From: Octopus sinensis
Taxonomy: Eukaryota
Reading direction: 5' to 3'
NCBI RefSeq assembly: GCF_006345805.1
Contig: NC_043002.1
Coordinates: forward strand, 35,340,001 to 35,404,000
Length of the DNA stretch: 64,000 nucleotides
Shown here one piece after another: positions 8,110-29,456 of this stretch (its first letter is position 1; the number at the start of each line of letters is the position of its first letter). A program made the position numbers and the translations under genes. The notes beneath the pieces are model-generated. The model was given only the letters and a program-made list of their open reading frames with translations, did not search any database and was not told the DNA's origin.

Positions 8110-9544
8110 CTCCCTCCCTCGTCTTGAAAGCCCTGTAAAGAGTCTGGGATACTGCCTTCCGACGTGACTAAAAGATAAAAAATTTTATTTTTTTAAGCGC
8201 GGTGCCACGAAAACTATAAGCTGCTCAAATGTTTATAAAATTATAGATATACATTAACAAAAATATTTAACTATGCTATTATAGTAAGCTTGTAGTAGCA
8301 AATTTTAAATTAATCTTAGTTGAAGGATATAATCTTATAAGTACATTTAACCGAATCAATAGCAAAATGTTTGGTAATTGATTACCTGTTTGAAATAAAA
8401 CCACAAACATTTACGTTATATGCATATTTTAAAATCTCTTTTTCATCCAATATATTACAACTAAAATGTTCTATTTAAGCCTTGAAATTCTTTTAAGTTG
8501 CGGATCAAGTTTGCTGTGTTATGACAGTTATTTTGAAACCGGTACGCGCTATTGATCCTCGACATTCCCGTCAATGTTACAAATCGTGTTACACACTTCA
8601 AGGTTAGGATAAGAAGATTTACGTTGTTAATTTTTAGATTGAACATAGAATTACTAATTATGTCAATTATACGACAAAGTTCGATTGATTAAAAAATAAG
8701 CAACTTTACGACCGATTTTGTTGGAAATATGCGAATGGAAAGTAATTAAAAACAATGAACGTATTTGCTTATTCGCTTCGCATAATGATGTCCCACGTTC
8801 GATCTCGAATCGACCCACGCAATGTGAGTGGAATTGGATAAACGAGAACAGCGGAAGTTTGTCGGATGAATTGTACTTTTAATTAAAAGGCCCAGCTTTT
8901 ATACAGATACTGTCATACTGAATATGTTCTTTAGTTTATTTTAACCATTTCGGCCGAGGCCATGATGGAAGAATACGTTAAAAAGAGTACAAATGTTTGA
9001 AGAATTCTCGTGCACGTATAATCCAATGAATGGGTAGTACCGTTGATCGAATGGAATACTCATCGACGAAACGGACGACGAATCAATTTACTTTTTAAAT
9101 AAAAATCAATAAAACTCCGCGATATATTACTAATTCTATGCTAAAAATGTAGATATTTTTCCAATAAATAATATTCACTTCATCGCATAAACTCAAATGG
9201 AGACTTTTACTGGTGATTATAAATCTCTTAAAAATAAAGGAAAACCATTATAAATGTTCGTCCTAAAATGAAAAACAAAACTAATTTTTCCTTGGTCCTT
9301 TCGTATTTTACTCACTTTTCAGATAATTCAGAAACGACTTCAATATTGGTAGAAGTTACGCAAACCAGGTAAGAGTTCTGAATAGGAATTAGGAAAATGT
9401 GGAGAGTGTGAGAGAGAGAAACTGAAATAGTTAAATGACAATTCGTTATCTTATGAAAGTGAAGTCAACTCAAGAGGAAGCAAGACGGTTTAATAACAGT
9501 AGCTAGGTGCCCGGCCTCGAAGTATCGCAACCGACCGTTGCCAT
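8110..9544 (-). CDS. Candidate 5' exons of a divergently transcribed gene of unknown product (MAT-NSYLVCVTSTNIEVVSELSE-NHVGRQYPRLFTGLSRRGRE)
   Basis: Exon 9377-9316 has a strong pyrimidine tract/CAG acceptor and a GTGAGT donor. Exon 8167-8110 has a TTTTAG acceptor and a GAG|GTATCT donor. The two join in frame (phase 2). A possible first exon ATG GCA ACG|GTCGGT lies at 9544-9536. The + strand of 1-8 kb is A-rich, as expected for minus-strand introns. The product is not recognised. Confidence 0.4.
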
Positions 9545-10149
9545 TGATAAAGCAAGCAGTCGGCCGACAATGTCTTCAGACAAATTAGCTGTCTTTTACT
9601 ATTGGAGAAAGAAAAAAAATTGCAAGCAGCACCATCTTTGTCGTCTTTCCACACCCTCTATTTCTGTTGATGTGTTCTTGCAACATAAATAGTAACAAGT
9701 TGTCACACAAACTGCACACGCACACACATATATACATACATACATATATATATATACACATACATATATATGGTAAGCAAAGAGCTCTTTAATTGTAAGT
9801 TGTGGGGATCTGATATAATCATGAAACCAACATTAAAATAAGTAAACGCGAAATGAAAATATATTCGGAGCAATTTTAAATCGCACACACACATATACAT
9901 ACCAATCGATATTTTTAAATATATCTTTCTATTCACACAAGTAAACTTCCATTCAAGTGCACGATTGCTGTAACTGCACGTTTTTCTCCCACCCCTCTAC
10001 TTTTGAACTGAAAAGGGATGCAAAAAAAATTGGTAAAAGAAAAAAGTTAACGGTATATAGGGAGACGACATATGCACGATTCAACTTAATCGTTATTCGC
10101 AGTATGAAATAAGTTTTAAACCAAGGTCAGAGGTGTACTGGAAAAACGA

Positions 10150-11672
10150 CTTAACACATGCGCAGAGTAAATAGAAAGCTGATCTAATACTGGGCTCTAT
10201 GCAGTTGATTGACGTCACCATCACTAGTTTTAACAAGAGAATCTTCTATTGTTTTCCATCTTAAACCATGTGTCTGCTCTCTGCTCATTCTTTCAACGCA
10301 CCTTGATAATGACAGAATGATTGCGTCTCTAACAACCTTGTACAAAACTACATGTACACATTAAAAAATATATTACGTGCAACTGGTCTTCCTGTTTGAT
10401 ATATATATATATATCCCATATTCGCGTAATTTCATTTCAGTCGTTTTTATTCCACTTCTCCTCCAATTTAAGAATCGAAAGTATATTTATTATGCCAGCA
10501 TTGTGAAATTTATCAACAAAGCCGGTTTTCAATTTAGTTGGGTTTATGCTAGATTGCCATCTAGCAAATCTTCACCAACAGCCATCACTTAATAATACCC
10601 ACGTGTCAGTCTAAAAAATCTTATTGTGAACGTAAGTGCTGTTGGTTTATTTAGTTCATGTTATTTATTTGACTGTATATTTATGTCGCAACTTTCTTTT
10701 GGCTGTTAAAACGATTTTTCTTCGCTTCTTAAAAAAAAAAAAAAATCGATATATTTCTTTACTCCCTTCTTTCCCTCAACCACCCATATTTTCAGTTTCG
10801 TGTAAATGAAAGAGAGAAAAAATGCTTTCTTGGCAGACATAAAATTTCCTACATATGAAAATTTTGCAAGTAAAGTATGGATGATTTAAAGTATATCGTT
10901 TTTATACCTCTCAACGGTCGTCCCATCTTTAGCGTAGCCAAAAACTTCTTTCGTAGTTATTGAAGACATCTTTTTATGTAATGGGGGAAAATAAAATACT
11001 AATTCATTCACTATTTTATATGGAAGGAAGAGGGGGAAATCAGGGAGGTAAGAGCCGCCTTACATTATGCTTATTGGTATGGAAGCGGGCAAGACATTCA
11101 GTCATGTGATTTAGGTCACATGACTATACTTTTTCATCTTAATCTCTAACCCTTCTTTCTAAAATCATTATTACAATAGTTGCTAATTCTTTAGAAAAAA
11201 AAAGCTTTCTGCATTTACAAATTAGACTTATTCGCTTATTTTTTTGTTTATTATTTTGCAAAAAAGGCTACATTTTAAACTGACTGGAAGTTCTCTTTTT
11301 TTTTTTCAATACTTGAAATTTGTCTCCAATATAATATAATAGTTGCATTTAAGAGGGAAGAATAAGTGCTCAATAATTTTCCGCTCTTTCTACTGCTTCT
11401 TTTTCCTAACTGCCTGCTGCCTTCCCCCTCTCTCTGTAATTTCTTACAATCCTTCTCTTGTTATATTATTAGCGAAGTAGAAGCAGTAATAGTGGTAGTA
11501 GTGGTGGTTGTAGAAGTAGTAGCAGTAGGTTCCTCTGTTTCCTACATAGCAACGTGCAGCTGCTGCGAGAAGTGGAGGGTATTATCAGATCCTCAGCTCT
11601 CACACAGACACATACTGCAGCGTTGAGCTCGTTTACAACTTAAAAGTATTTAGCGTTAGTGAAAATGGCGGC
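10150..11672 (+). promoter_or_regulatory. Probable (bidirectional) promoter region of hnRNP L
   Basis: Locally CpG-enriched. NRF1-like CATGCGCA at 10157-10164, full CRE TGACGTCA at 10210-10217, E-box CACGTG at 10600-10605, inverted M-box pair at 11100-11125, and YY1 consensus AAAATGGCGGC overlapping the ATG (11662-11672). No TSS data. Confidence 0.5.
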
Positions 11673-14600: not shown

Positions 14601-17600
14601 CACCATCACCCGTGGTGCATGTCCGTGGTCTGTCTGAGACTGTGGTAGAGCAAGATTTGGTTGATACCTTGCAAAACTTCGGGTGCATTAGGTAAGTTTA
14701 TTGATATTTATGAGCCTTTCTGCTTTAAGGCTTCGCGTGTGATTGTGTTAATACTGTAAATGTTACATTCGTATACCAATCACTTCCCCCTCTCTATTAC
14801 AGTTATGTTATCATGATGCCAAAGAAAAGACAAGCTCTGGTTGAATTTGAGGTGAGTTGAGCGATTTTACTAAATCCATTGGAAATATTGAAATTTGTAT
14901 TTGTTGATTAGATGGTATTTTATCATTCATCAAATTGAGTTATATTTTTAATTTTTTTTTTTTCATATCGTGTATATTTAATTGTGAGGAAATTATTTAT
15001 TATTGTATAGGATATAGCCGGAGCGACTGAGTGTGTGAACTATGTTCAGTCCAATCAACTTTATGTTAGTGGTCACCCTGCTTTCTTTAATTTCTCTACC
15101 AGTCAGAAGATCCAGAGACCAGGGTAAGCTTTATATATATTTTAGAAAATATCGGGTCTGTTTACTGTGGGTATAATTTCATAAAGATGATTTAAGGCCA
15201 CTTAAAAGTATTGTTGTAAATAACAATGTATTTTGTTAAAAAGGGGTACAGAAAAACTACATATTTTACAAGTTTAATATATATATATATATATATATAT
15301 AATCCATCTCTTTTGTTTGTAGTGGCCCAGAAGATATGCGGACTGCAAACCATATTTTGCTCTTTACCATTTTAAATCCACAATATCCGATCACTGTGGT
15401 ATGTAACCATTTTAATATTTTCTATTCTAATTGGGCATTTGTTTAATAACCATTACAAATATCTTTGTATTTAATTTTCCAGGAAGTGATGCATACAATC
15501 AGTTCTCCATATGGGCAAGTACAAAGAATTGTTATCTTCAAAAAGAATGGTGTCCAAGCAATGGTTGAATATCCTTATTTTACAAAGTGAACATAGCTTT
15601 CAATAAATTAAAATTAACTATTGGTTGTTTGCATTCTGACTTTAAAGGCACTTAATTCTCTTTATTTACTTGCATAAAGCTAATGTTACTGTTTTCACTG
15701 GAATGAGTTTTTTCCACTGTTGTACTGTTATGATTAAATGCTTGGGGTGAATTTGTATAAATTGTTAGGTAAGATGCTTATTTGATAGGGCCATTTGTAA
15801 AATAAATATCAATTATTTTTAGAAGTTCTTTGACATTTGAGAGTTTTTACATTGTGTAATGTGTTCATATGCTGAGTGCACAGGACAAAAATATACTGAC
15901 ATTTATTAAACTCTAATAGCTGGGTATTTGCTAAGAACTCAACAATCCTGGCTGGAGGCAGGATTTCAACTCAGCCAAATCTGGTAATTTAACCCAAGAT
16001 AAAGGCAAAGTTGGCTTAGACAAGATTTAGACCCAAGTGCAGTTGGACAAAGTATTTTAGTGATCACTGTAGCAACTCTGTTAATTTGACGTTTTCTCTG
16101 TGTGTACGCATTACTGTGTTATTTAGAAATTGGAAGTCCATTTGCATGATTTCAGGTTCAATCTCAATGCATAGCACTTTGTGCAGGTCTCATTTTCTGT
16201 AGCCCTGTACTGACCAAATCCTTGTGAGTAGATTTGGTATTGCTGCAGAAATTGCAAAAAAGCCTGTTTGAGTGTAATGTTTGTCTCTGCTTCTTTTGAC
16301 ATCACTGGTAGTTATTATACAAGCAGTATTATTCATTTCCAATTTGCTGTGGAAACATGTCTGGCTACAGGAAAATATTACCGTGTTTGGAAATCAGGAA
16401 GATCATTCTGCTGTAGAAAATCAACCTCAGTAAACCGACCCATGCGGGCATAGGAAAGTATGTTAAAATAGCACAATTGTTTTATAAAATGTATATTTTG
16501 TAGTTGGTATTCCTTAACCATTCGTACATTTGAAACTGTTGATCAAGCAAAACGTGCAAAGCAGGCTCTGAATGGTGCAGACATTTACTCTGGTTGCTGT
16601 ACACTCAAGATTGAATATGCAAAGGTAAATTTTCAAGTTTTGAATTCAGTATTAGAAAATATATTCACTGTTATAGATCTTGCTTCAATTAATTCTGAAA
16701 TTTTTAATTGGTTAGCTTTTGAAAGTGAATTTAAGTTTCGATGTTTCATTTGTGGGTAAGTACCCTCATTGCAGGATTGTTTGTGTTGTGATTCATTCAA
16801 TGCTTTTGCAACTTAGGGTGATTATCAGATATGTCGTGTAAAGAATTTTGTTTTAAATATATTACGGTCTAGATTTTTGTTCTTAATAAATTCAGTTCAA
16901 TGGGTTTTTTAATTTGTTTTTTTTATCAGCCTACAAAATTGAATGTTGTCAGAAATGACAATGAAAGTTGGGACTACAGCAATCCTTCTCTCGGTAAGAT
17001 GCAATTTTAAACATTTTAAATTTGATGGACACCAGCACTCTTATTTTCCTTTCTAGAACTGGTGGTAATCCTGGTTAACATACGCACTATCCAGTTGAAA
17101 ATGACCGTAACTTGCTTAATTCTAACCTATTTAATGTTTCAATATTGCAAGCCAAAGGCATGGCTGTAGTTTTAATGTAACAATAGTTGCTACTAACATA
17201 CTCTTTCTTAAATTAGCACTAAGCAACCAAAACAATGAAATTATTTGTTATCTTGGTTCCTTAGTGATGTCTTCTGGTCTTGTTTAGAGTAATTCTGTTC
17301 TCTTGTTGCTTAATTGGAATAGTTTGCGAGTTTTTCCTTTGATTCCATAAGGGTGCTAGTGAACAACAATACCATTACATTTTGCAGAACTTAGGGAATC
17401 TGTCACCTTTGTTTAGCAGATAGCCCAGTGATGGGAAATCTGCTAGTCAAATTTCTTTAATTGGTGTAATTTTTAATGGAATGGTTTGGTTGTGGTATAC
17501 TAATAAATTATTCTAAGGTAGGTGGTTTTAAATTTGGCCATGGGCTTCTTCAGTCATTAACTTTAAATTATCTTTCTATTGTTTGTTAGTATCTTTTTGA

Positions 17601-20600
17601 GGAGTGGTTATTAGGGGAGGAAAAATGCATGCATACAAATACAAACAAGTGACCATTTCAGATAACATACAAAACATTTGTCTCAGTCATATTGAAACTA
17701 AATAAACTTTCAATTACAAAACATTTTATATCGTATCATAGACTTAACATTCCAAATTTCGTTACAAAACATGCACATTTTATGAAGCACAATCATCTGT
17801 ATTCTCAGTAAATGAATTAAAATGATCATGTGCTGGCAGGGAACTACTATTGTCTGAAAGATGGTAGTAGGTTAGTGCCCAGTGAAACCACTTGTTTGTG
17901 AAGTTATTCACTTGTTTTATTCTGCACTAGCTTTTTACATTCAGCCAAGTTGTTAAAAGTGATTTCCCCCTTATTTTTTTTATATATATATTTTGAACAT
18001 TAAAAAAATCTTGCCAGCCCTTTTTTAAACAGTTGATTATGAAGCAAGTTGTTTGCTGTCTGAGATGCCATCCTTTCCAAAATCCCCAACATGAAGACAA
18101 GTCATCCATCTTGAGAAAATCCATTTGAGAACAAACTTTAAAATCATTACACTAACATTTGGGTTTTTATTAAACCCATTAAAACAAGTCAGCCACATAC
18201 AACGTAGAAAAGAAGTGGACATGTTACCTAATATTCAGAATTTGTAAATGTTCCACCTTTCTATCCAGCAAAAATTACAAACAGAAGCTGCTATTCTACA
18301 TCTAGAACAATAGAAAAAGTTGCAGAATAAATTCAAGCACAGAAAGATATCAACATCCACATTACTCATCTGACCGTCACAGGTCACAGACTGGAGCATT
18401 CTCCACCTGCAGACAGACTTCCCATACACAGAAGAAGCACTATTCAGTCAGTCAGACAAGTACATCAACCAAACTTAAAATACAATATCATCACCACCAC
18501 CATCACTACCAAGCAGATACTCACCACCGCACAGAACAAAACATAAAGCGGCCAGGTCCACACAAGGTGTCACTATACCCTGTAAACCCATCCATCTGTC
18601 TGACTCCTACGCTTGTTTGCCTTCCTACAACCAAGTCTGGTTAGTTTACTGACCTGTGATTCTGTGTGCATTATACAGGGTGTAGGCCAGTGCAGGCTCG
18701 GCCCTCCTGCTACTACTACTACTACTGCTGGATGAGGAGGAGGAGGAGAATGTGAGCAGCATCGTGTTGATTGAACCATATCAGGCTCAACTACTTCATT
18801 GACCAACAGCTACTTCTGGCTTTAACCAAATCACCATGGCTCCTTCCATTGCTGTTATCTCACCAGAAAATCAACTGGTAGATTTTTTATTTTTCTCCTT
18901 ATTTTCCAGGATGTCTTTTATTAAAAATAATATTTATTTTTTTTAATATTTAAGTTTTCCATATATCTATTATACATTTCCTGTTTTTCCTTTTGGATTA
19001 CTAATTTTCATTCTCTGAAGCCATTTAAGATATTGGCTTGCTTTCAAAAAATTGACATTACCATCTAACATTAAAACAGAAAAGGTTAGACTATAATGAG
19101 ATATTTATTTCCTTCAATTTAATATTTTCATACATTAATCTTTTATAATGCTGGAACGTTTTAGAGCAAATGGAAGAAGTGTAGTCATCATTTGATTACC
19201 ATACGCTGACTGACTGACTGCTGCTGCTATCACCAGTTTTGTGTTTTTAACTGCAACAAGTAATAGTTTGGAAATACAAGAAAATTCAGTTTGTGTACAG
19301 AACACTGCATCTGGTTTTACTGTATTGAAAAGATAACTAAAATATTTGTACTCTAGCAAGATCTGTACATTTTCACAAACACACGTAGGCTGATTCTAAG
19401 TAGTGTAAGCAGAATAAACCCAGTGAAATGTTGAAAATTTACATTTATTACATTACATCTAAATTGCTAGTTGAAAACTATTCTAATTTAAAAATTTTTT
19501 ATGCATAGGTAATTAAGTGTAATGTGGATCAAAATAATTTAAAGTAATATATGCAGTGACTGCTCAATCATTCCCTACCTTCCCCCATACGATTACTTCG
19601 ATGCTGATCCATTGAAATCTAAATCTAATAATCTCAGGCATCTGACAAACTTTCCCTATTCCAAATATTTGGATTTAATTTTTTGTATTTTTGTAAATAT
19701 AAAAATTTCACTTGGACTTCTTCACATTCAATGGGTTTCACTTTTATTAAATGAACTATGAATTGAGAACTCCTTTCCATTTATTTTTTAAAATGTATGT
19801 ATACCAAAAAAAAAAATGCATTAGTTTATTTTGCTGGGGTGAGTTTTCCATCCACCTCATTGGTAAGTTGTGTAGAAAATTGCCAGTTATGTTTTGTTTT
19901 TGTGTGTGGGATCATGTGTTGATTTTTTTTCTTCTTCTTCCACTCCCTTTTCTGTGTCGTACATAATAGTCCAAACCACTGTAGTCAGATTCCCAGGCTG
20001 TAGTGAGTTACTTTCCTTGTACAGAATTGATATTTGCCGGATCTTGCAACTGGGCTTTTTTTTCTTCATCCACCTCTCCTCTCCCTTCACCACAGGACTT
20101 TTAAGAGAGATTACTACATTCTTGGAATGTAGATTTTCTTTCTGGAGGACACACAAAGCAAGCTGTTTTATTACATAAGTGCATGAACTGGTTAAATTTT
20201 AAAATTCCTTTGGATATATTAACATTTTTTCTTAAGGTGTAGGTGAGGTTGAAATAGTTCGATTTATGAGAATGCACAACTTGTGCTTGATTTTATATAT
20301 TCATACATTATCTCTGGTTTAGCTAATTCGCTTACTAAATCTGCAAATTAACTCTTCCCATTCATCTTAGTTTTTATGATATTAACATTTTAACGCGTTT
20401 CCTAATTTACGGGGGGTTTTAATTTCTTTTTTTTTTTTCTCTCATTTCTAATTTACACTAAAGCTTTGTTTCATAATGATTCAGATTGAGGAGTTAATTT
20501 AGTTAGATTTACATTGCCACATTTCCTGAAAGTTATTCAAATGGTTGGTAATTTATGTTGACCAATCTTGTGCCAGCCAAATTCTTAGTAATTCTTTCAG

Positions 20601-23600
20601 CTGAGAAAGTTAAAACCATAGTATACTAAAAGGCAACAGCAGTCAGTTAATCTGCGGTTTGTTTGGCAAACTAGTAACTTCACTGTCTGCCGCTTTCCTT
20701 GCTTGCTCTGAGACTTATCTCACCTGTGTCACTTTGTTTCAGGTAAGAGTCCTGTGGTTGCTAAAAATCAGCCTTTGCTGCAAGATCCGCGCTATGCACC
20801 AGGGCCCACTCCCTATGGTGAGTGTCCTCAATCACCAGGTGAAGTATTGTTCTAAAGCTCCATTTTCTTCTTAGTTGTTGTCACATCTCATAATGCTCTA
20901 GTTTTGAGTTGCATAATATTTAAAAATAGAGCTTCTCTATCTTTCTTGGTTACTAGAATTTATTTTAAGCAATACCTCTCTTTTAAACATTTCGGTGCCA
21001 GTTTTCGATAATGAAAAGTAGTGTCCTGTATAATGCAGAGTGCTACTTGGTCACAAGTGTATTGAAAGTGATTGAATATATGCGTTTTTAAAAAAAAAAT
21101 TCTTTTTTTTTTTTTAATTATCTAAAAATTGCTATATGGCAACTATTTGTGGTTATCTGTTGGTGTGAGTTGTTTACTGTGAAAATGCTTGTTGAATGGC
21201 ATGGCAGGCTGCTGTTATTTTTTCAATATATCTTGGCCTTATGGGCCGTTCTCCAGACTTCTTTCTATTAGTGCAGATATTTTCTTCAAACTGTCTGCAT
21301 CCTTAAACTATATTACAATGTAGGTTTTAACAATCATTTAGTCCCTGTGTGATATTTTTCTTCTCCATTTGTGGATTTGGTATCTCTGGTTGGTTTTCAA
21401 ACTATAAAACATACAGCCTTTATGTTGTAGCTAATTGACCTGAAATAATTTTTGGACCCCTTGTCCTGTCAAGCTTGTAATTTTCTCCCCTCCCACTTAG
21501 TCTTTTTACCTTCTATTAGAGTTAGCAAAATGTATTGAATCTTGCATTTTTTAAGATTTTTTTTTAGCAACCATTTAAGATGTTTTCTCCAAATTGAAGA
21601 AAATAAAATGTAGTTAAGGGTTAAAGTGAAACAAATTTTAGTATTCAGATTGAAAGACAAGTAATTTTGTACAAAAATGAATTATTAGCACCATTTCATA
21701 TTACATTATTTGCTTGCTGAATTTAATTTATTCACATTGTCATCCAATCATTAATTCTTATACTCTAATTTGCCATAATGTTGATTTGCTTCATTTTATT
21801 CATTTGTTTATTTTTCATATCTAAAGAAGTTGGACTCTTGGGTAATTTGCTTTTTATTTTTTTTTTTCTTCTTCCTCCATTTTGTCTTGGATGATTGCTT
21901 TTCTAGTGCTTGCTAGTCGTGTCATCTAAGATGTTGTAAAGTTACTGTTGTGCTACCTAGTATGTTTTGACTTAACTATACCTTTGGCTGGCATTAACAC
22001 TTTCAAAATCTTTCTTGGGTTGGGCAAGATATAGTTAGCATTAAAATGATAGCTTTTCTTTTTATGAGTGTCGTCTTCATTGTTTTTGTATTGTGTGTAT
22101 ATATATATATCTATATATATAAATATATTAAATGTGGCAGCTCTTGTACTGTTTGCCACCCCCTCAGCTTATTGGCTCTCTCACACCTATATTCAAATAA
22201 ATATGGTACATATTCTTTTAGATACATACATACATGCATAAAATATAAATGGAAATGGGTTTTTTTATGAATACAGCTGCTCTGGTTCTTTTATGTTTGA
22301 ACATGAAAGTGAATTCAGAGAGAAAGTTGGTATTGATATTTTAAAATGTTTGGTATCAGCTTATGAGATTGTTTTTTATATAAACAAAAAAATTACTCTT
22401 GATATTAAAACTCTTTGATTGAGTTTGCCCTCTTTTGTAGATCTATTAAGAAATGGAGTTTTTCTCTGAAGTGTTTTAAATTATTGGATTGTTACATATG
22501 TGCAAATTTTGAGTTTTACACTGTACATAGCTGAGTGAGCCTACTGTTTCTGCAAAAATTTTATTTAGTATTGGAAATGTTTTCGTATAATGGCTGATTT
22601 GGATTTTTTTTTTATTTATTTATATATATACATATATATATATATTTGAAATTGTCTACTTCTGCAAAAATAGTATAAGTGTTGAGATAAACTAATGGCT
22701 GCCTAAGCCCTGAACATAATACTTTGATAATGATTGTTAGGAATTTCCTACAATTAAATTTGGGAGATTTATGCTGTAAATAATGCTTTGATTGTTATTG
22801 TCTTGCCAATCGCTCCTTCATTTTTGATTGTTAGTTTAAACCTAATTTGCTAATACTTTTTGCATTAGTTTTCATATATTACTCTCTTGCTTTCACTCTT
22901 CATACACATTATGCCTCTAATTTTCCTTGCATGCTTTAACAAAACATTTCATTCAAAGCACTTGTATAGTGATTAGCAACTAACTATTTTCCTTTATATT
23001 TTATGAATAAATAGTATGGTTCATGCTACTTAATTAAATTTAAGGGAAAATATTGCTAGTCAGTAGCAGAATGCAAATAATTTAGGACTCTGACTTTATT
23101 ACCTGCTAAGATTATCATAAAATGGTTGCAAGTTAGTATTAACAGCACATTTAAAATATTTGGTAAAGCTGTTAAGACAGAAATTAAGTTGCAATGAATA
23201 TTTTTGCCTTGGGATGGAAACTCAATCTCAACAAAGCTACTAACCTGCGATTCCATTTGGTAAGCAGTGTAGTAAACTTGTAACTTATTACTAAACTTCT
23301 TCAAAATCTTATATCGAATAGGCAGCCTACTCATTAAGGAATATAGTCACAAAAGTGTCAACTAAAAAGTTTGGTTGTATTTTATTTTCTTAAATTTTGT
23401 AGAGCAGTAGGGGTGTTATTCATTATCATATGATTGTCAACTGGCATGCCAACAAGTACACATACTTTAATTGAAGAAATTTGAATTTTCTGTTCCTCTT
23501 TATTAGGATGATGGCTATGAAATAATTTGTAGTGTTACTTATGTGACTCATGGAAATTGTTTTTAATCATTTGAGTCTTGGATATTTTGATTTGATTGCT

Positions 23601-26600: not shown

Positions 26601-29456
26601 CCTCAACAAGGAGCAGTACTTATGGCTTATGGCCTTAATATGGATAAAATTAACTGTGATTCAATTTTCAATTTGTTCTGCCTTTATGGTAATGTTGTAC
26701 GGGTAAGTTATGGTTGTTTTTGTTTTGTTATTCTTTCACTAGAAGAAATTTTTCTTAAACTACAAATTGTTTGCTTGAGATAACTTTTTCTTTTTTCTTT
26801 TATAATTAGATTAAGTTCTTAAAGAGCAAAGAAGGGTCAGCAATGGTCCAGATGGGGGATAATCAAGCAGTGGACAGAGTCATTCAGAATCTCAATAACT
26901 GCTACTTTGTTGGTAAAAAGATACAACTGGGGTTAGTATTTTTCATTCACTTAATACATTCTTTTTGGCTACTGCTTCTATAAAGGTAGCATATTTTGCC
27001 AGCTATGTTTTGTCTAAATTTGGTTTAAGTGTCTTGCTGCATATAATGATTCTTCAGTAAATCAAATTATTTGTCAAATGATTATCTTTGCCACAGTTTT
27101 ATTAGTGGGAAAATAGTTTGTTTTTTTTTCTTCTTCGGAAAAATTGGCAATTATCTTCATGTATATTTTTCTTTCTAATACAGATATTCTAAGCAGGCTT
27201 TTCTGCAAGATGTTCCTAATCCACATACTCTTCCAGATGGATCTCCATCATTCAAAGATTTCATGGGTAGCCGAAACAACCGTTTCACTAACCCAGAAGC
27301 TGCAAGCAAGAATCATATCCTTTTTTAATTAATCTTACATCATTAGATAACTTATATGCATTGTGTTAATATTCGATGTATATAGTAACTCATTTTAAAC
27401 AATTCAAAATTTGGGTGGGGGTGCATTTAACTTTCTATTACTAAAACAGGATGGAAATTTAGAATAAATTCAGTATAACAGAAACAGATAACTATTTGTC
27501 GAATTATGTTTTCTTGTAAATTGTACAAATGTTCACAGCTTTAATTTTTGAGTTTTGCTTGGAATCCTTAACATACATCAAGTATTCAAGGGCCTGCTAA
27601 AGTACTACACTATTTCAATGCTCCACCCAATATAACAGAGGATGAAATCTGTCAGGTTGGTTATAATTATTTGTTTTTAGTCTTTGCTGTAAGAGAATGT
27701 TAAGTTCTTCAATAAATTCCCATTCTATTTTGTACTAACTGTGCATATTTTTTATACCAGGTGTTTACAGATGCTGGAGCAAAGAGTCCTGTAAGGATTA
27801 AACAGTTTCCTTCCCGTAGTAAGTATTTACTTTGTCTTTGTGTTTTCTCTCAGCTCAGCTGTGGTGCCAGGTTTAGGCTTATTGTCTCTCTCTGACCAGG
27901 TGTTTTTTATTATAGCCCCAGGCCAACCTAAGTCTTGTTAGTGGATTTGGTAGATGGAAATTGAAGGCCATTGTGTGCATATCTTTGTGTTTTCTCCCTC
28001 ACTTAATAACCAGTGATGGTTTGTTTGCAGCACCATAACTTAGAGGTTCATATAAAACTGATAGAAAGTGCTAAGCTTTAAAGAATAGTATGTGGGTATT
28101 TTTTTTTTTTTGTTTTTTATATATATATATATATATAAAAAAAATTTATATATATATATATATATATTAAAGACCCTTCAGGTTAGTGTACTAGCATGGC
28201 CATGGTCCAGTGACTGAAACTAGTAAAAGATAGGGTCGGGAAGTTTAAGTGCAGTTTTCTTTACAGTGTTTGGTTTAATTTGCATCAATGTTAGCTGAAT
28301 ATTTTTCTTAATAGTTTTAATTTGTGTTTCAGCGGAAAGAAGTTCTACTGGGCTGGTTGAGTTTGAAACTAAAGCCGATGCTATTGAAGGCCTTGTGGCT
28401 TGTAACCATCAAAGTATTCCCAATCCTAGTAAGTTCAGTTTTCATGAATTTTTTTCAGTTTACACATAAATAGCACCCTTGCTTATTGTGTTTTATATAC
28501 AGTGGTGAAGTAATGAACAGAGTACTATACACCAAGGGCCTCGTTCTATGGTATTTGTGAATTTAGACTGGTTTCATAAAGTAAGACATCAGCATAAGAA
28601 ATTGTTAGATAAGGAGTTATACAATAAAATTTTAATATTGAAGGGTTGTGCAAATTCCTGGTTTTCTTTTAACTTAATATACATTAAACAGAATAAAATA
28701 CTGGAATGTAAATCAAATTTACATGCACAGGATTTCTAGCTTCTGAACATATATGGAATGCCACCTTTTCTTCTGCATAAGGTTTCATTTTTACAGAAAT
28801 CACTCCAAAGGAAAATGTAAAAAGAAATTAATCTAATGGTTTTGTTTCCTTGAGAGGACTGTAGCCAAATCTAACATCTTCCTTAAAGATGACTAAGAAA
28901 AGTATTTTAACTTTTACTCTATTCAGGCGTAAGTCAATGGAAAAGGTGAAAAGTCTCCAGAAGTTTGCAGCTCTCAGATATGTAAAATAGTGTAAATTTG
29001 TTTACATGGTGAAATCATGTGTTATCTCAAATGATATTTGCACTGATATTTTCCTTTTAAACACAACTAGGTTATTATAGTCATTTTTAGGCAGGTTGGC
29101 AACATTCGCTTGTGAAATTTTGAACCAGGTTAATATTTGTAATTAGTATGTGACATTGTTTACTGAGTTGCTTACAAAGGCTCAAGTGTGTAATTCTTAT
29201 AGTAGTACTCTGATATGACTAAGCTAAACATACTTTCCTGACTTTTTTTTTCTTCTCCCTACCCCTGTTAGATTATTTTGTATCTCTAGGAATTCACCAG
29301 CTGTTTGTTTTAACTTACCCACCTTGCTTTTCTTTTTTTCCTTTTATGACACAGGCTCGTTACTTCAGTGCTGTCTTTCTGTTTTTGTTCATTTCAGATG
29401 GCAAGAATCCATTTGTCTTCAAGCTGTGCTTTTCTCAGACCCCTATAATGGGTTAA
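11665..29456 (+). CDS. HNRNPL: Heterogeneous nuclear ribonucleoprotein L orthologue (4 RRMs, Gly/Tyr/Pro-rich RRM2-RRM3 linker), 17 coding exons, 564 aa
   Basis: Exons: 11665-11742, 14570-14691, 14803-14851, 15011-15123, 15323-15398, 15483-15568, 16528-16624, 16930-16993, 20743-20817, 23951-24153, 26511-26702, 26810-26931, 27184-27314, 27582-27655, 27761-27818, 28333-28428, 29398-29456. They total 1695 nt with compatible phases and no internal stop. The translation has hnRNP L hallmarks: SPVVHVRGL, MPKKRQALVEFED, IVIFKKNGVQAMVEF, ALNGADIYSGCCTLKIEYAKP, FNLFCLYGNV, RNNRF, VLHYFNAP, LKLCFS-like terminus (FKLCFS). 14 introns are GT-AG and 2 are U12-type. Confidence 0.96.
15569..16527 (+). other. 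U12-type (minor spliceosome) AT-AC intron 6 of hnRNP L
   Basis: 5' site /ATATCCTT at 15569, branch site TTCCTTAAC at 16510-16518, terminal AC at 16526-16527. Removal gives GTT GA|A TTT = the conserved VEF of RRM2 RNP1. Confidence 0.95.
18679..18751 (+). other. Candidate 73-nt poison cassette exon in hnRNP L intron 8
   Basis: Branch-like TACTGAC at 18647-18653, acceptor TACAG ending 18678, donor AAT|GTGAGC at 18752. Inclusion frameshifts to TAA at 20744-20746. It is preceded by a CA-rich tract. Confidence 0.55.
24440..24978 (-). mobile_element. Dispersed repeat, Helentron/HINE-like
   Basis: Reverse complement of 36530-36960 with an internal duplication. The classification from the TTATTAC..GTTTGTTTGTCC start is tentative. 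Confidence 0.55.
25879..26100 (-). mobile_element. RTE 3' UTR fragment, antisense in hnRNP L intron 10
   Basis: CATCATCGTTTAACGTCCGCTTTCCATG tail and body shared with 48432-48660. Confidence 0.85.
27315..27581 (+). other. U12-type intron 13 of hnRNP L with non-canonical AT-AA termini
   Basis: 5' site /ATATCCTTTT at 27315 and branch TCCTTAAC at 27565-27572. Only the AA at 27580-27581 restores the frame (AAT C|GT ATT CAA = NRIQ, as in vertebrate KNRIQHP). Confidence 0.88.

What the first reader, a model, noticed from the sequence alone, without database searches (positions are those of the whole stretch)
17620..18760. Candidate hnRNP L autoregulatory circuit: CA-rich cluster plus 73-nt poison exon in the intron matching vertebrate intron 6
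Seen: intron 8 is U-rich except about 17620-18600, which switches to C/A-rich sequence dense in ACAT/CACA/TACA. It is followed by branch TACTGAC (18647), acceptor 18678 and donor AAT|GTGAGC (18752). Inclusion adds GCRPVQARPSCYYYYYCWMRRRRRM and then hits TAA at 20744-20746, far upstream of the last junction, so it would be an NMD target. Known: hnRNP L binds CA-rich RNA and in mammals activates its own roughly 70-nt poison exon 6A via an intronic CA cluster (Rossbach et al. 2009). Inferred: this intron follows the same WDYxNPxL-coding exon (numbering from memory), so the feedback loop may be ancestral to bilaterians or convergently rebuilt in a mollusc. I know of no description in cephalopods.
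Basis: partly seen in the sequence, partly recalled or inferred. Interest (0 to 1): 0.85.

Follow-up and report, generated by a model that had tools for sequence, protein, structure and literature searches.

The report
Conserved octopus hnRNP L poison-exon module
An intron of the octopus hnRNP L gene holds a CA-rich stretch followed by a small exon-like element, better preserved between octopus and cuttlefish than the gene's protein-coding exons and lying where vertebrates keep the self-limiting "poison exon" of the same gene, so this feedback switch is probably very old, although no transcript was found that shows the exon in use.

Summary
The window is the Octopus sinensis hnRNP L locus. It is 100% identical to GCA_006345805.1 over the stretch compared.

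**Splice signals.** On their own they are ordinary. The acceptor ranks 17 of 189 AGs in the intron, and the donor 17 of 195 GTs.

**Conservation.** This is what sets the element apart.
- Window 18183-18922 is the only purely intronic segment of the gene that aligns with cuttlefish.
- It is also the highest-scoring aligned segment of the whole gene.
- Its core, 18503-18927, is 83-96% identical, against 80-92% for coding exons 7 and 8.
- Identity peaks at 96-100% over the branch point, the acceptor and the start of the exon.
- CA-richness is kept in cuttlefish, and CA positions are conserved preferentially (p = 0.008).

**Position.** The intron and its phase match those of vertebrate exon 6A.

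**Other animals.** In limpets, oyster, scallop, amphioxus and alligator, the CA-densest stretch of the gene also lies in this intron. Limpets have their own conserved frame-shifting mini-exon directly after it.

**Caveats.**
- I found no transcript evidence.
- The 73-nt boundaries are not secure. The cuttlefish equivalent is 81 nt and in frame. A second conserved donor at 18878 gives a 180-215-nt exon with stop codons in all four species.
- There is no detectable sequence homology to the non-cephalopod elements.

**Verdict.** It is probably a real member of the known hnRNP L autoregulatory kind, found in a new lineage.

The parts
16930..16993 (+). hnRNP L coding exon 8 (...PTKLNVVRNDNESWDYSNPSL + G). 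Its donor is TCG|GTAAGA, phase 1.
   Evidence: Spliced alignment of P0245 to the window. tblastn in all loci.
17620..17800 (+). Distal A/CA-rich segment (ACAT and TACA dense). It is conserved only among octopods (Argonauta), not in cuttlefish.
18061..18600 (+). Core CA-rich cluster (A 39%, C 26%; 14.3 CA per 100 nt). It is the presumed hnRNP L binding platform upstream of the weak 3' splice site.
   Evidence: CA positions are conserved preferentially, and cuttlefish insertions are A/C-rich.
18503..18927 (.). Highly conserved core, 83-96% identical between octopus and cuttlefish. It lies within the 740-nt block 18183-18922, the only purely intronic conserved element of the gene.
18647..18678 (+). 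3' splice-site unit: branch point TACTGAC (18647-18653), a UG-interrupted pyrimidine tract with no internal AG, and AG at 18677-18678. It is invariant in all four cephalopods.
   Evidence: Matrix score 4.3, rank 17 of 189.
18679..18751 (+). Short form of the candidate poison exon (73 nt; 70 in O. bimaculoides, 55 in Argonauta, 81 in cuttlefish). The first ~40 nt are nearly invariant. The 3' part is a length-variable (TAC)n/(GAG)n microsatellite. Donor AAT|GTGAGC at 18752.
18679..18877 (+). Long form of the candidate poison exon (199 nt; 196, 180 and 215 in the other species). It ends at the conserved donor-like CTG|GTAGAT (18878) and has an in-frame TGA at 18753-18755. In-frame stops are present in all four species.
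18878..18909 (+). GTAGA followed by a U-rich tract and CAG, perfectly conserved. The AG at 18908-18909 is the best-scoring acceptor-like site of the whole intron. Its role is unresolved: a U-rich enhancer of the 18878 donor, a protein-binding site, or a second 3' splice site.
20743..20817 (+). Exon 9, a 75-nt in-frame alternative cassette (alternative donor at 20838). It starts with GTAAGAG, which supplies the premature TAA (20744-20746) when the 73-nt exon shifts the frame.

Best explanation
Intron 8 of the Octopus sinensis hnRNP L gene carries a conserved autoregulatory alternative-splicing/NMD module of the kind described for human HNRNPL exon 6A.

**Proposed mechanism.**
1. A sense-strand CA-rich cluster (about 18061-18600) lies 80-600 nt upstream of a deliberately weak 3' splice site. 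That site has a perfect branch point but a G-interrupted pyrimidine tract.
2. When hnRNP L protein is abundant, it binds the CA cluster and promotes use of the acceptor at 18678.
3. The resulting cassette exon runs from 18679 to a donor at 18752 or 18878.
4. The short form shifts the frame into TAA at 20744. The long form runs into TGA at 18753.
5. Either way the mRNA encodes only RRM1-2 plus a 25-residue tail. It has more than nine downstream junctions and a very long 3' region, so it should be degraded by NMD.
6. That lowers productive mRNA and closes a negative feedback loop.

**Shown.** The anatomy, the frame consequences, the positional and phase homology to the vertebrate intron, the very strong conservation across coleoid cephalopods centred on the 3' splice site, and the retention of CA-richness.

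**Inferred.** That the exon is actually spliced in, which donor is used, that hnRNP L binds the cluster and activates rather than represses, and that the product is an NMD substrate.
For: **Host gene and position.**
- The gene is the hnRNP L orthologue.
- Vertebrate truncated isoforms break exactly after the same exon, for example ...NLSGQG|NPAGRF....
- The alligator poison exon sits in the same intron and the same phase 1.

**CA cluster.**
- It is in the top 0.12% of windows of its size and is the densest in the gene.
- It is retained in cuttlefish (15.9 CA per 100 nt against an intron mean of 6.5) and in Argonauta.
- CA positions are 79% conserved against 63% for other positions (Fisher p = 0.008).
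- Cuttlefish-specific insertions are 65% A+C.

**Conservation.**
- 18183-18922 is the only intronic element shared with cuttlefish and the highest-scoring segment of the gene, at 532 bits.
- Identity is 83-96% across 18503-18927 and 96-100% over branch point, tract, AG and the first 40 nt of the exon. Exons 7 and 8 are 80-92% identical.

**Frame.**
- Microsatellite length changes among octopods keep the short exon at 3n+1 (73, 70 and 55 nt).
- The long form has in-frame stops in all four species.

**Alternatives excluded.**
- Not coding: every frame of both strands has several stops.
- No Rfam family match.
- No other copy of the block within the 64-kb window.

**Cross-phylum pattern.**
- In 9 of 9 species sampled, the CA-densest 300-nt sense window of the gene lies in the homologous intron, once one scallop satellite array is set aside.
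- The only intronic element conserved between Lottia and Patella is a 38/37-nt frame-shifting mini-exon candidate directly after their CA/A-rich stretch.

**Known system.** In human HNRNPL, protein binding just upstream of the conserved exon 6A (70 nt) activates its inclusion (PMC7547044; PMC8652244; PMC6547761).
Against: - **No transcript evidence.** The search with the exon-included N-terminal protein returned no cephalopod truncated form. The junction-peptide profile gave no hit. Seven exact look-ups of predicted inclusion or retention products were absent from the collection. Vertebrate exon-6A-type truncated products are present there (P0003 with 17 members, P0012 with 27). The power of this null is low, because NMD targets are rare and cephalopod RNA data are sparse.
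- **Ordinary splice sites.** Scores are within the normal range and rank about 17th among decoys.
- **Short-form donor is not preserved in quality.** It is GTGAGC, GTGTGC and GTGACC in the three lineages. The cuttlefish short exon is 81 nt, in frame and stop-free.
- **Conservation extends beyond the 73-nt exon.** It runs 175 nt further and includes a stronger acceptor-like site at 18909 whose role is unexplained.
- **Direction of the effect is uncertain.** The general hnRNP L RNA map quoted in PMC7547044 associates upstream binding with repression, so the sign cannot be read from geometry.
- **No sequence homology** to the alligator, limpet, scallop or oyster elements.
Confidence: 0.6

Rival explanations
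1. The conserved block is an intronic splicing regulator, not an exon. It would control the downstream in-frame alternative exons: exon 9 (75 or 96 nt) and the 15-nt microexon. It would act through CA-rich and U-rich protein-binding sites, with no NMD step.
For: Exon 9 really is alternative. It is skipped in cuttlefish isoform P0255 and in all four decapod transcript-derived proteins (P0122, P0258-60), and it has 88-100% conserved flanks. Its acceptor is recursive-site-like, CAG|GTAAGA. CA-rich elements are known distal splicing regulators (PMC7547044).
Against: The block lies 1.8-2.5 kb upstream of exon 9. Conservation peaks precisely on a complete branch point, tract and AG unit with a clean AG-exclusion zone, and continues through donor-like sites. 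That is more than a protein-binding platform needs. The vertebrate precedent at the same position is an exon.
Confidence: 0.15
2. The acceptor at 18678 or 18909 leads into a regulated exon or a terminal exon whose control is not by hnRNP L itself. Candidates are PTB, TIA or ELAV-type factors on the U-rich tract, or intronic polyadenylation. The CA-richness would then be incidental or serve another factor.
For: The U-rich GTAGA...CCAG element is perfectly conserved and contains the best acceptor-like site of the intron. Several invertebrate gene models end just after this exon by reading into the intron, namely Tegillarca P0001 and Paralvinella P0014 and P0018. ATTAAA follows at about 18920 in octopus.
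Against: The hexamer is not conserved in cuttlefish or Argonauta. CA dinucleotides are preferentially conserved, and CA-richness recurs in the same intron across phyla in the very gene whose product binds CA-rich RNA.
Confidence: 0.12
3. The block is a DNA-level element, such as a transcriptional enhancer or other conserved non-coding element, or an unrelated or antisense non-coding RNA that happens to sit in this intron.
For: Long conserved non-coding elements in introns of regulatory genes are often enhancers. A good donor-like site exists on the minus strand: CTG|GTGAGA, read from 18860-18868.
Against: The composition is strongly strand-asymmetric, and the splice signals are on the sense strand and in order. 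There is no Rfam match. Predicted structure is no more stable than shuffled sequence (z = -1.06) and has no real covariation, with 1 of 115 predicted pairs changed on both sides. The position matches a known RNA-level element in vertebrates.
Confidence: 0.08
4. It is an ordinary in-frame alternative coding exon that adds a short Cys/Tyr/Arg-rich peptide between RRM2 and the linker.
For: The cuttlefish short form is 81 nt, in frame and free of stops.
Against: In three of four species the short form shifts the frame. The encoded part is a length-variable microsatellite. No annotated or transcript-derived protein carries the insertion. Conservation is highest in the non-coding flank and shows no codon pattern.
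Confidence: 0.03

Closest known systems
Human/vertebrate HNRNPL exon 6A autoregulatory poison exon with intronic CA cluster (Rossbach et al. 2009; cross-regulates HNRNPLL)
   Same: The gene is orthologous. The intron is the same one, directly after the WDYxNPxL exon, and has the same phase 1 in a Gly codon. A CA-rich cluster lies upstream of a small cassette in the middle of a ~3-4 kb intron: 70 nt in human, about 65 nt in alligator, 55-81 nt here. A premature stop follows inclusion. The region is more conserved than neighbouring sequence.
   Different: There is no detectable sequence similarity to the alligator element. The stop lies in the next exon rather than inside the cassette for the short form. 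The 3' half is a variable microsatellite. There are two candidate donors and an extra strong acceptor-like site. Usage, hnRNP L binding and NMD are untested here.
Ultraconserved poison exons of splicing regulators (SR and hnRNP genes; Lareau 2007, Ni 2007)
   Same: It is a non-coding cassette region in an RNA-binding-protein gene that is conserved better than the coding exons over hundreds of millions of years. The splice sites are weak and the outcome is a premature stop.
   Different: Those elements were defined in vertebrates with transcript and NMD evidence. This one is a cephalopod element known only from genome comparison.
Patellogastropod candidate mini-exon in the same intron (Lottia L008 7379-7416; Patella L009 12369-12405)
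   Same: The intron and phase are the same. A CA/A-rich stretch comes immediately upstream. The length shifts the frame (38 and 37 nt). It is the only conserved intronic element between the two limpets.
   Different: The sequences are unrelated by statistical test. The best profile hit does land in register on the Argonauta exon, but at E = 0.59-5.2, and the reverse search fails. It is much shorter, and the conservation is far less extensive.

Membership tests
hnRNP L exon-6A-type autoregulatory AS-NMD module | The host gene is an hnRNP L/LL orthologue. | tested here: met
   tblastn with human hnRNP L. The best database hits are Octopus hnRNP L isoforms. The window is identical to the O. sinensis locus.
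hnRNP L exon-6A-type autoregulatory AS-NMD module | The element lies in the intron that follows the WDYxNPxL exon, in the same intron phase. | tested here: met
   Vertebrate truncated isoforms diverge right after ...NPNLSGQG. The alligator poison exon lies in that intron, phase 1. The octopus intron is also phase 1 in a Gly codon.
hnRNP L exon-6A-type autoregulatory AS-NMD module | A CA-rich cluster lies in the intron upstream of the cassette. | tested here: met
   14.3 CA per 100 nt against 7.5 for the intron. Top 0.12% of windows, densest of the gene, and kept in cuttlefish and Argonauta.
hnRNP L exon-6A-type autoregulatory AS-NMD module | The cassette exon is actually included in a fraction of transcripts. 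| tested here: inconclusive
   No truncated or junction-bearing product was found in the protein collection. These searches have low power, and RNA-seq reads cannot be examined with these tools.
hnRNP L exon-6A-type autoregulatory AS-NMD module | Inclusion creates a premature termination codon. | tested here: met
   Short form: TAA at 20744 in both Octopus species and, by the same shared GTAAGA exon-9 start, in Argonauta. Long form: in-frame stops in all four species. Exception: the cuttlefish short form is 81 nt and in frame.
hnRNP L exon-6A-type autoregulatory AS-NMD module | The cassette region is highly conserved in evolution. | tested here: met
   83-100% identity between octopus, Argonauta and cuttlefish across 18503-18927. 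It is the only intronic conserved element of the gene.
hnRNP L exon-6A-type autoregulatory AS-NMD module | hnRNP L protein binds the cluster and activates inclusion, and the product is NMD-sensitive. | not testable with these tools
   This needs CLIP or EMSA, minigene or knock-down experiments, and NMD inhibition.
Orthology of the exon itself to vertebrate exon 6A (common descent of the sequence) | There is detectable sequence similarity between the cassettes or their flanks. | tested here: not met
   Only a 53-nt, 72% match to a different part of the alligator intron was found, at E = 0.004 in a 19-kb search with permissive scoring. There is no match to the scallop or limpet introns. Profile searches are not significant.
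Transposable-element-derived or repeated sequence | Other copies exist, or element-encoded reading frames are present. | tested here: not met
   No other copy in the 64-kb window beyond low-complexity matches. No long open frame on either strand. A genome-wide copy number could not be tested.
Known structured RNA family (Rfam) | A match to a covariance model, or a stable conserved fold. | tested here: not met
   Only a chance-level hit elsewhere in the intron. Fold z-score -1.06, and 1 of 115 predicted pairs changed on both sides.

The most novel reading that the evidence does not exclude
The CA-cluster-plus-poison-cassette feedback module in the intron after the WDYxNPxL exon was already present in the hnRNP L gene of the last common ancestor of bilaterians. 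It has been kept at the same intron and phase for over half a billion years, while the cassette sequence itself turned over in each lineage: vertebrates, coleoid cephalopods, limpets, and possibly bivalves and amphioxus. That would make it one of the oldest positionally conserved autoregulatory splicing circuits known for an hnRNP.
Probability: 0.35. Interest if true: 0.8.

Novelty: new member of a known kind. Interest (0 to 1): 0.68.

Why it matters
Autoregulation of splicing factors through poison exons is well documented in vertebrates. How old the individual circuits are, and whether they are inherited or reinvented, is still debated.

This locus offers a concrete test case with four useful properties:
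- A cephalopod intronic element is conserved better than the coding exons across the octopus-cuttlefish split. From memory, that split is roughly 250-300 million years old.
- It lies at exactly the intron and phase of the human HNRNPL exon 6A.
- It is preceded by the type of RNA sequence that the gene's own protein binds.
- Matching CA clusters lie in the same intron in three further phyla or classes.

If transcripts confirm inclusion, two things follow. hnRNP L homeostasis by AS-NMD would extend to lophotrochozoans. It would also give a defined pair of elements, the CA cluster and a weak 3' splice site, for testing whether the binding logic is conserved while the exon sequence drifts.

I found no description of this in the searchable literature.

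Tried and rejected
- **Transposable element or repeat.** Self-comparison of 17600-18950 against the window gave only low-complexity matches. No open reading frames typical of such elements were found.
- **Known RNA family.** Nothing was found in the block. One sub-threshold bacterial leader hit elsewhere in the intron is chance.
- **Conserved RNA structure.** RNAalifold proposed a stem pairing the region upstream of the acceptor with the start of the exon. Only 1 of 115 predicted pairs is changed on both sides, and the single-sequence fold is no better than shuffles (z = -1.06). I dropped this idea.
- **Protein-coding exon on either strand.** All six frames carry 3-14 stops in each species. 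The net indel between octopus and cuttlefish in the microsatellite is not a multiple of three.
- **Transcript evidence through the protein collection.** All three attempts were negative.
- **Sequence homology to non-cephalopods.** blastn and nhmmer profiles run in both directions were not significant. The limpet profile's best hit lands in register on the Argonauta exon, but at E = 0.59-5.2, and it is not reciprocated.
- **A primate locus for comparison.** P0092 turned out to be an intronless retrocopy, so I used the alligator locus instead.
- **The original Rossbach 2009 paper.** It is not held in the library. Its content is cited through PMC6547761, PMC7547044 and PMC8652244.
- **Candidate cassettes after the CA clusters of scallop, oyster and amphioxus.** I identified these only by eye and do not claim them.
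Full report
**Identity of the locus**

Database searches return Octopus hnRNP L isoforms as the best hits. The stretch of the window compared (16900-20850) is 100% identical to the O. sinensis assembly locus L001, GCA_006345805.1.

An exact spliced alignment of isoform X1 (P0245) gives 18 coding exons. Exon 8 is 16930-16993 and ends with ...WDYSNPSL plus the first base of a Gly codon. Intron 8 is 16994-20742. Exon 9 starts at 20743.

**Check of the observation**

Reading the sequence confirms each of these:
- TACTGAC at 18647-18653
- AG at 18677-18678
- a 73-nt interval, 18679-18751
- AAT|GTGAGC at 18752
- the added peptide GCRPVQARPSCYYYYYCWMRRRRRM
- the TAA at 20744-20746

If the donor at 18752 is skipped, an in-frame TGA follows at once (18753-18755).

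The composition switch is real but not continuous. Positions 18061-18600 are A 39% and C 26%, with 14.3 CA per 100 nt against 7.5 for the intron. Positions 17620-17800 are A-rich with many ACAT and TACA. The stretch between them, 17801-18060, is T-rich.

The core block is in the top 0.12% of sense-strand windows of its size in the 64 kb (z = 4.1). Only windows holding (CA)n microsatellites rival it. It is the CA-densest part of the gene.

The splice signals alone do not exceed chance. A crude matrix trained on the gene's own sites scores the acceptor 4.3 (rank 17 of 189 intronic AGs) and the donor 5.3 (rank 17 of 195 GTs). Both are within the range of real sites but are not distinctive.

**Conservation**

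I fetched the orthologous loci of O. bimaculoides (L002), Argonauta hians (L003) and the cuttlefish Acanthosepion pharaonis (L004). I located the same two exons in each.

- Against cuttlefish, the only part of intron 8 that aligns is 18183-18922, at 75% over 847 columns.
- Over the whole gene, it is the only purely intronic conserved segment and has the highest score of any segment, exons included.
- In 50-nt windows, octopus-cuttlefish identity is 83-96% from 18503 to 18927. It reaches 96-100% across branch point, pyrimidine tract, AG and the first ~40 nt of the exon. Coding exons 7 and 8 are 80-92% identical, and most of the remaining intron is 20-50%.
- CA-richness is kept: 15.9 CA per 100 nt in the 540 nt upstream of the cuttlefish acceptor, against an intron mean of 6.5.
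- In the less conserved part of the cluster, CA positions are 79% identical against 63% for other positions (Fisher p = 0.008). Cuttlefish-specific insertions are 65% A+C.

The block is not coding in any frame. It matches no Rfam family. It has no supported RNA fold. It has no other copy in the window.

**Anatomy of the candidate exon**

The 5' 40 nt are nearly invariant. The 3' part is a (TAC)n/(GAG)n microsatellite that varies in length.

| Species | Short form (nt) | Frame | Short-form donor | Long form to CTG\|GTAGA(T/A) (nt) |
|---|---|---|---|---|
| O. sinensis | 73 | 3n+1 | AAT\|GTGAGC | 199 |
| O. bimaculoides | 70 | 3n+1 | AAT\|GTGAGC | 196 |
| Argonauta | 55 | 3n+1 | AAT\|GTGTGC | 180 |
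| Cuttlefish | 81 | 3n, no stop | CAT\|GTGACC | 215 |

The short-form donor therefore weakens outside Octopus.

The second donor-like site, at window 18878, is perfectly conserved. It yields the long form, which carries in-frame stops in all four species.

It is followed by an invariant U-rich tract ending in CAG at 18909. This is the best acceptor-like site of the whole intron, with a score of 12.7 that exceeds every real acceptor of the gene. Conservation stops about 20 nt after it.

The module is therefore real. Its exact exon boundaries cannot be fixed from sequence.

**Search for transcripts**

- A search with the N-terminal half plus the cassette peptide returned many vertebrate truncated products that end in exon-6A-type tails, but no cephalopod one.
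- A profile of the exon 8/cassette junction peptides of the four species found nothing.
- Seven exact look-ups of predicted inclusion, retention or in-frame products were absent.
- Annotated and transcript-derived cephalopod proteins show only the productive forms.

This null is weak evidence. NMD substrates are scarce and cephalopod RNA data are limited.

**Comparison with vertebrates**

Human exon 6A is 70 nt (chr19:39332253-39332322, hg19; PMC6547761). It is highly conserved, and hnRNP L binding just upstream activates it (PMC7547044; PMC8652244).

Truncated vertebrate products diverge immediately after ...WDYTNPNLSGQG. In the alligator locus (L006):
- The cassette begins at 11128 in the intron after that exon, also phase 1 in a Gly codon.
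- It carries an internal stop.
- CA-rich clusters lie 230-950 nt upstream.

Position, phase, size class and geometry therefore match. Sequence does not. The only match is a 53-nt, 72% stretch elsewhere in the alligator intron, at a permissive E of 0.004.

**Other invertebrates**

The same intron, in the same phase, exists in scallop, oyster, two limpets and amphioxus.

None of them shares sequence with the cephalopod block.

In every species sampled, however, the CA-densest 300-nt sense window of the gene lies in this intron. The intron makes up only 8-43% of each gene. The one exception is scallop, where a 31-nt satellite array near the 3' end outranks it, and the intron holds the next-best window. 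My rough product of the intron fractions, treating lineages as independent, puts this at about 1 in 1000 by chance.

Between Lottia and Patella, the only conserved intronic element (E = 1e-6) is a 38/37-nt frame-shifting interval. It is flanked by CAG| and |GTGAAG or |GTGGAG and lies directly after their CA/A-rich stretch.

This pattern favours an old module whose cassette sequence turns over. It does not exclude repeated invention.

**Mechanism proposed**

hnRNP L binds the CA cluster upstream of a weak 3' splice site and promotes inclusion of a cassette that ends the reading frame after RRM2. The mRNA is then removed by NMD, or at least encodes a non-functional product, giving negative feedback.

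The anatomy, frame, homology of position and conservation are shown. Binding, the direction of the effect, donor choice and decay are inferred. I put this at about 0.6.

The main rivals are:
- a distal regulator of the truly alternative exon 9 and the microexon (0.15)
- a regulated or terminal exon controlled by other factors (0.12)
- a DNA-level or unrelated RNA element (0.08)
- an in-frame coding cassette (0.03)

**Novelty**

Searches of the held literature found no description of an hnRNP L poison exon in cephalopods or other invertebrates. I class it as a new member of a known kind.

Noticed in passing
window 20672-20892 (exon 9 = 20743-20817, alternative donor 20838): Exon 9 is an in-frame alternative cassette. 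It is skipped in cuttlefish isoform P0255 and in all four decapod transcript-derived proteins. Its flanks are 88-100% identical to cuttlefish. Its acceptor reads tttgtttcag|GTAAGAG, the classic recursive-splice-site motif, which would regenerate the exon 8 donor TCG|GTAAGA after the first splice.
   Followed up: partly
window 21827-21841: A 15-nt microexon (EVGLL) is used in isoform X1. About 60 nt of flanking intron is conserved with cuttlefish.
   Followed up: no
window 15569-16527: U12-type AT-AC intron with donor ATATCCTTAT and branch TCCTTAAC. It is present at the same position in all bilaterians sampled, including alligator, and is switched to the GT-AG subtype in the two limpets. The O. 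vulgaris protein P0252 reads into it (YPYFTNWYSLTIRT), which is an annotation error.
   Followed up: partly
window 27315-27581: Second U12-type intron with donor ATATCCTTTT and branch TCCTTAAC. It ends in AA rather than AC or AG. It is present in molluscs, and amphioxus shows the matching branch site. It is absent in alligator. The cuttlefish annotated proteins lack FTNPEAASKNRIQG, probably because of it.
   Followed up: partly
window 18860-18909: TCACCAG (18860-18866) can pair with CTGGTAGA (18875-18882) and so mask the candidate donor at 18878. All species differences fall in the loop. The following U-rich tract with CAG (18909) is the top-scoring acceptor-like site of the intron.
   Followed up: partly
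window ~8665-10969 (minus strand); also L003, L008, L011: An aldose 1-epimerase gene lies head-to-head upstream of hnRNP L in Octopus, Argonauta, Lottia and amphioxus. From memory, this resembles the human GALM-HNRNPLL neighbourhood, so it may be an ancient microsynteny.
   Followed up: no
protein P0002 (O. sinensis, different chromosome): A 201-aa 'hnRNP L-like' protein, 86% identical to exons 1-7 and ending at ...CCTLKIE. It is probably a truncated retrocopy or paralogue.
   Followed up: no
L007 (Pecten maximus) ~26700-28100: A tandem array of a ~31-nt CA-rich unit (caccagtaactatagtaacaacccacacct) lies near the 3' end of the scallop hnRNP L gene.
   Followed up: no
proteins P0001, P0014, P0018, P0047: Several bivalve and annelid gene models end just after the WDY exon. 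For P0001, P0014 and P0018 the tails are consistent with reading into this intron. This hints at intron retention or split annotation at the same place.
   Followed up: no
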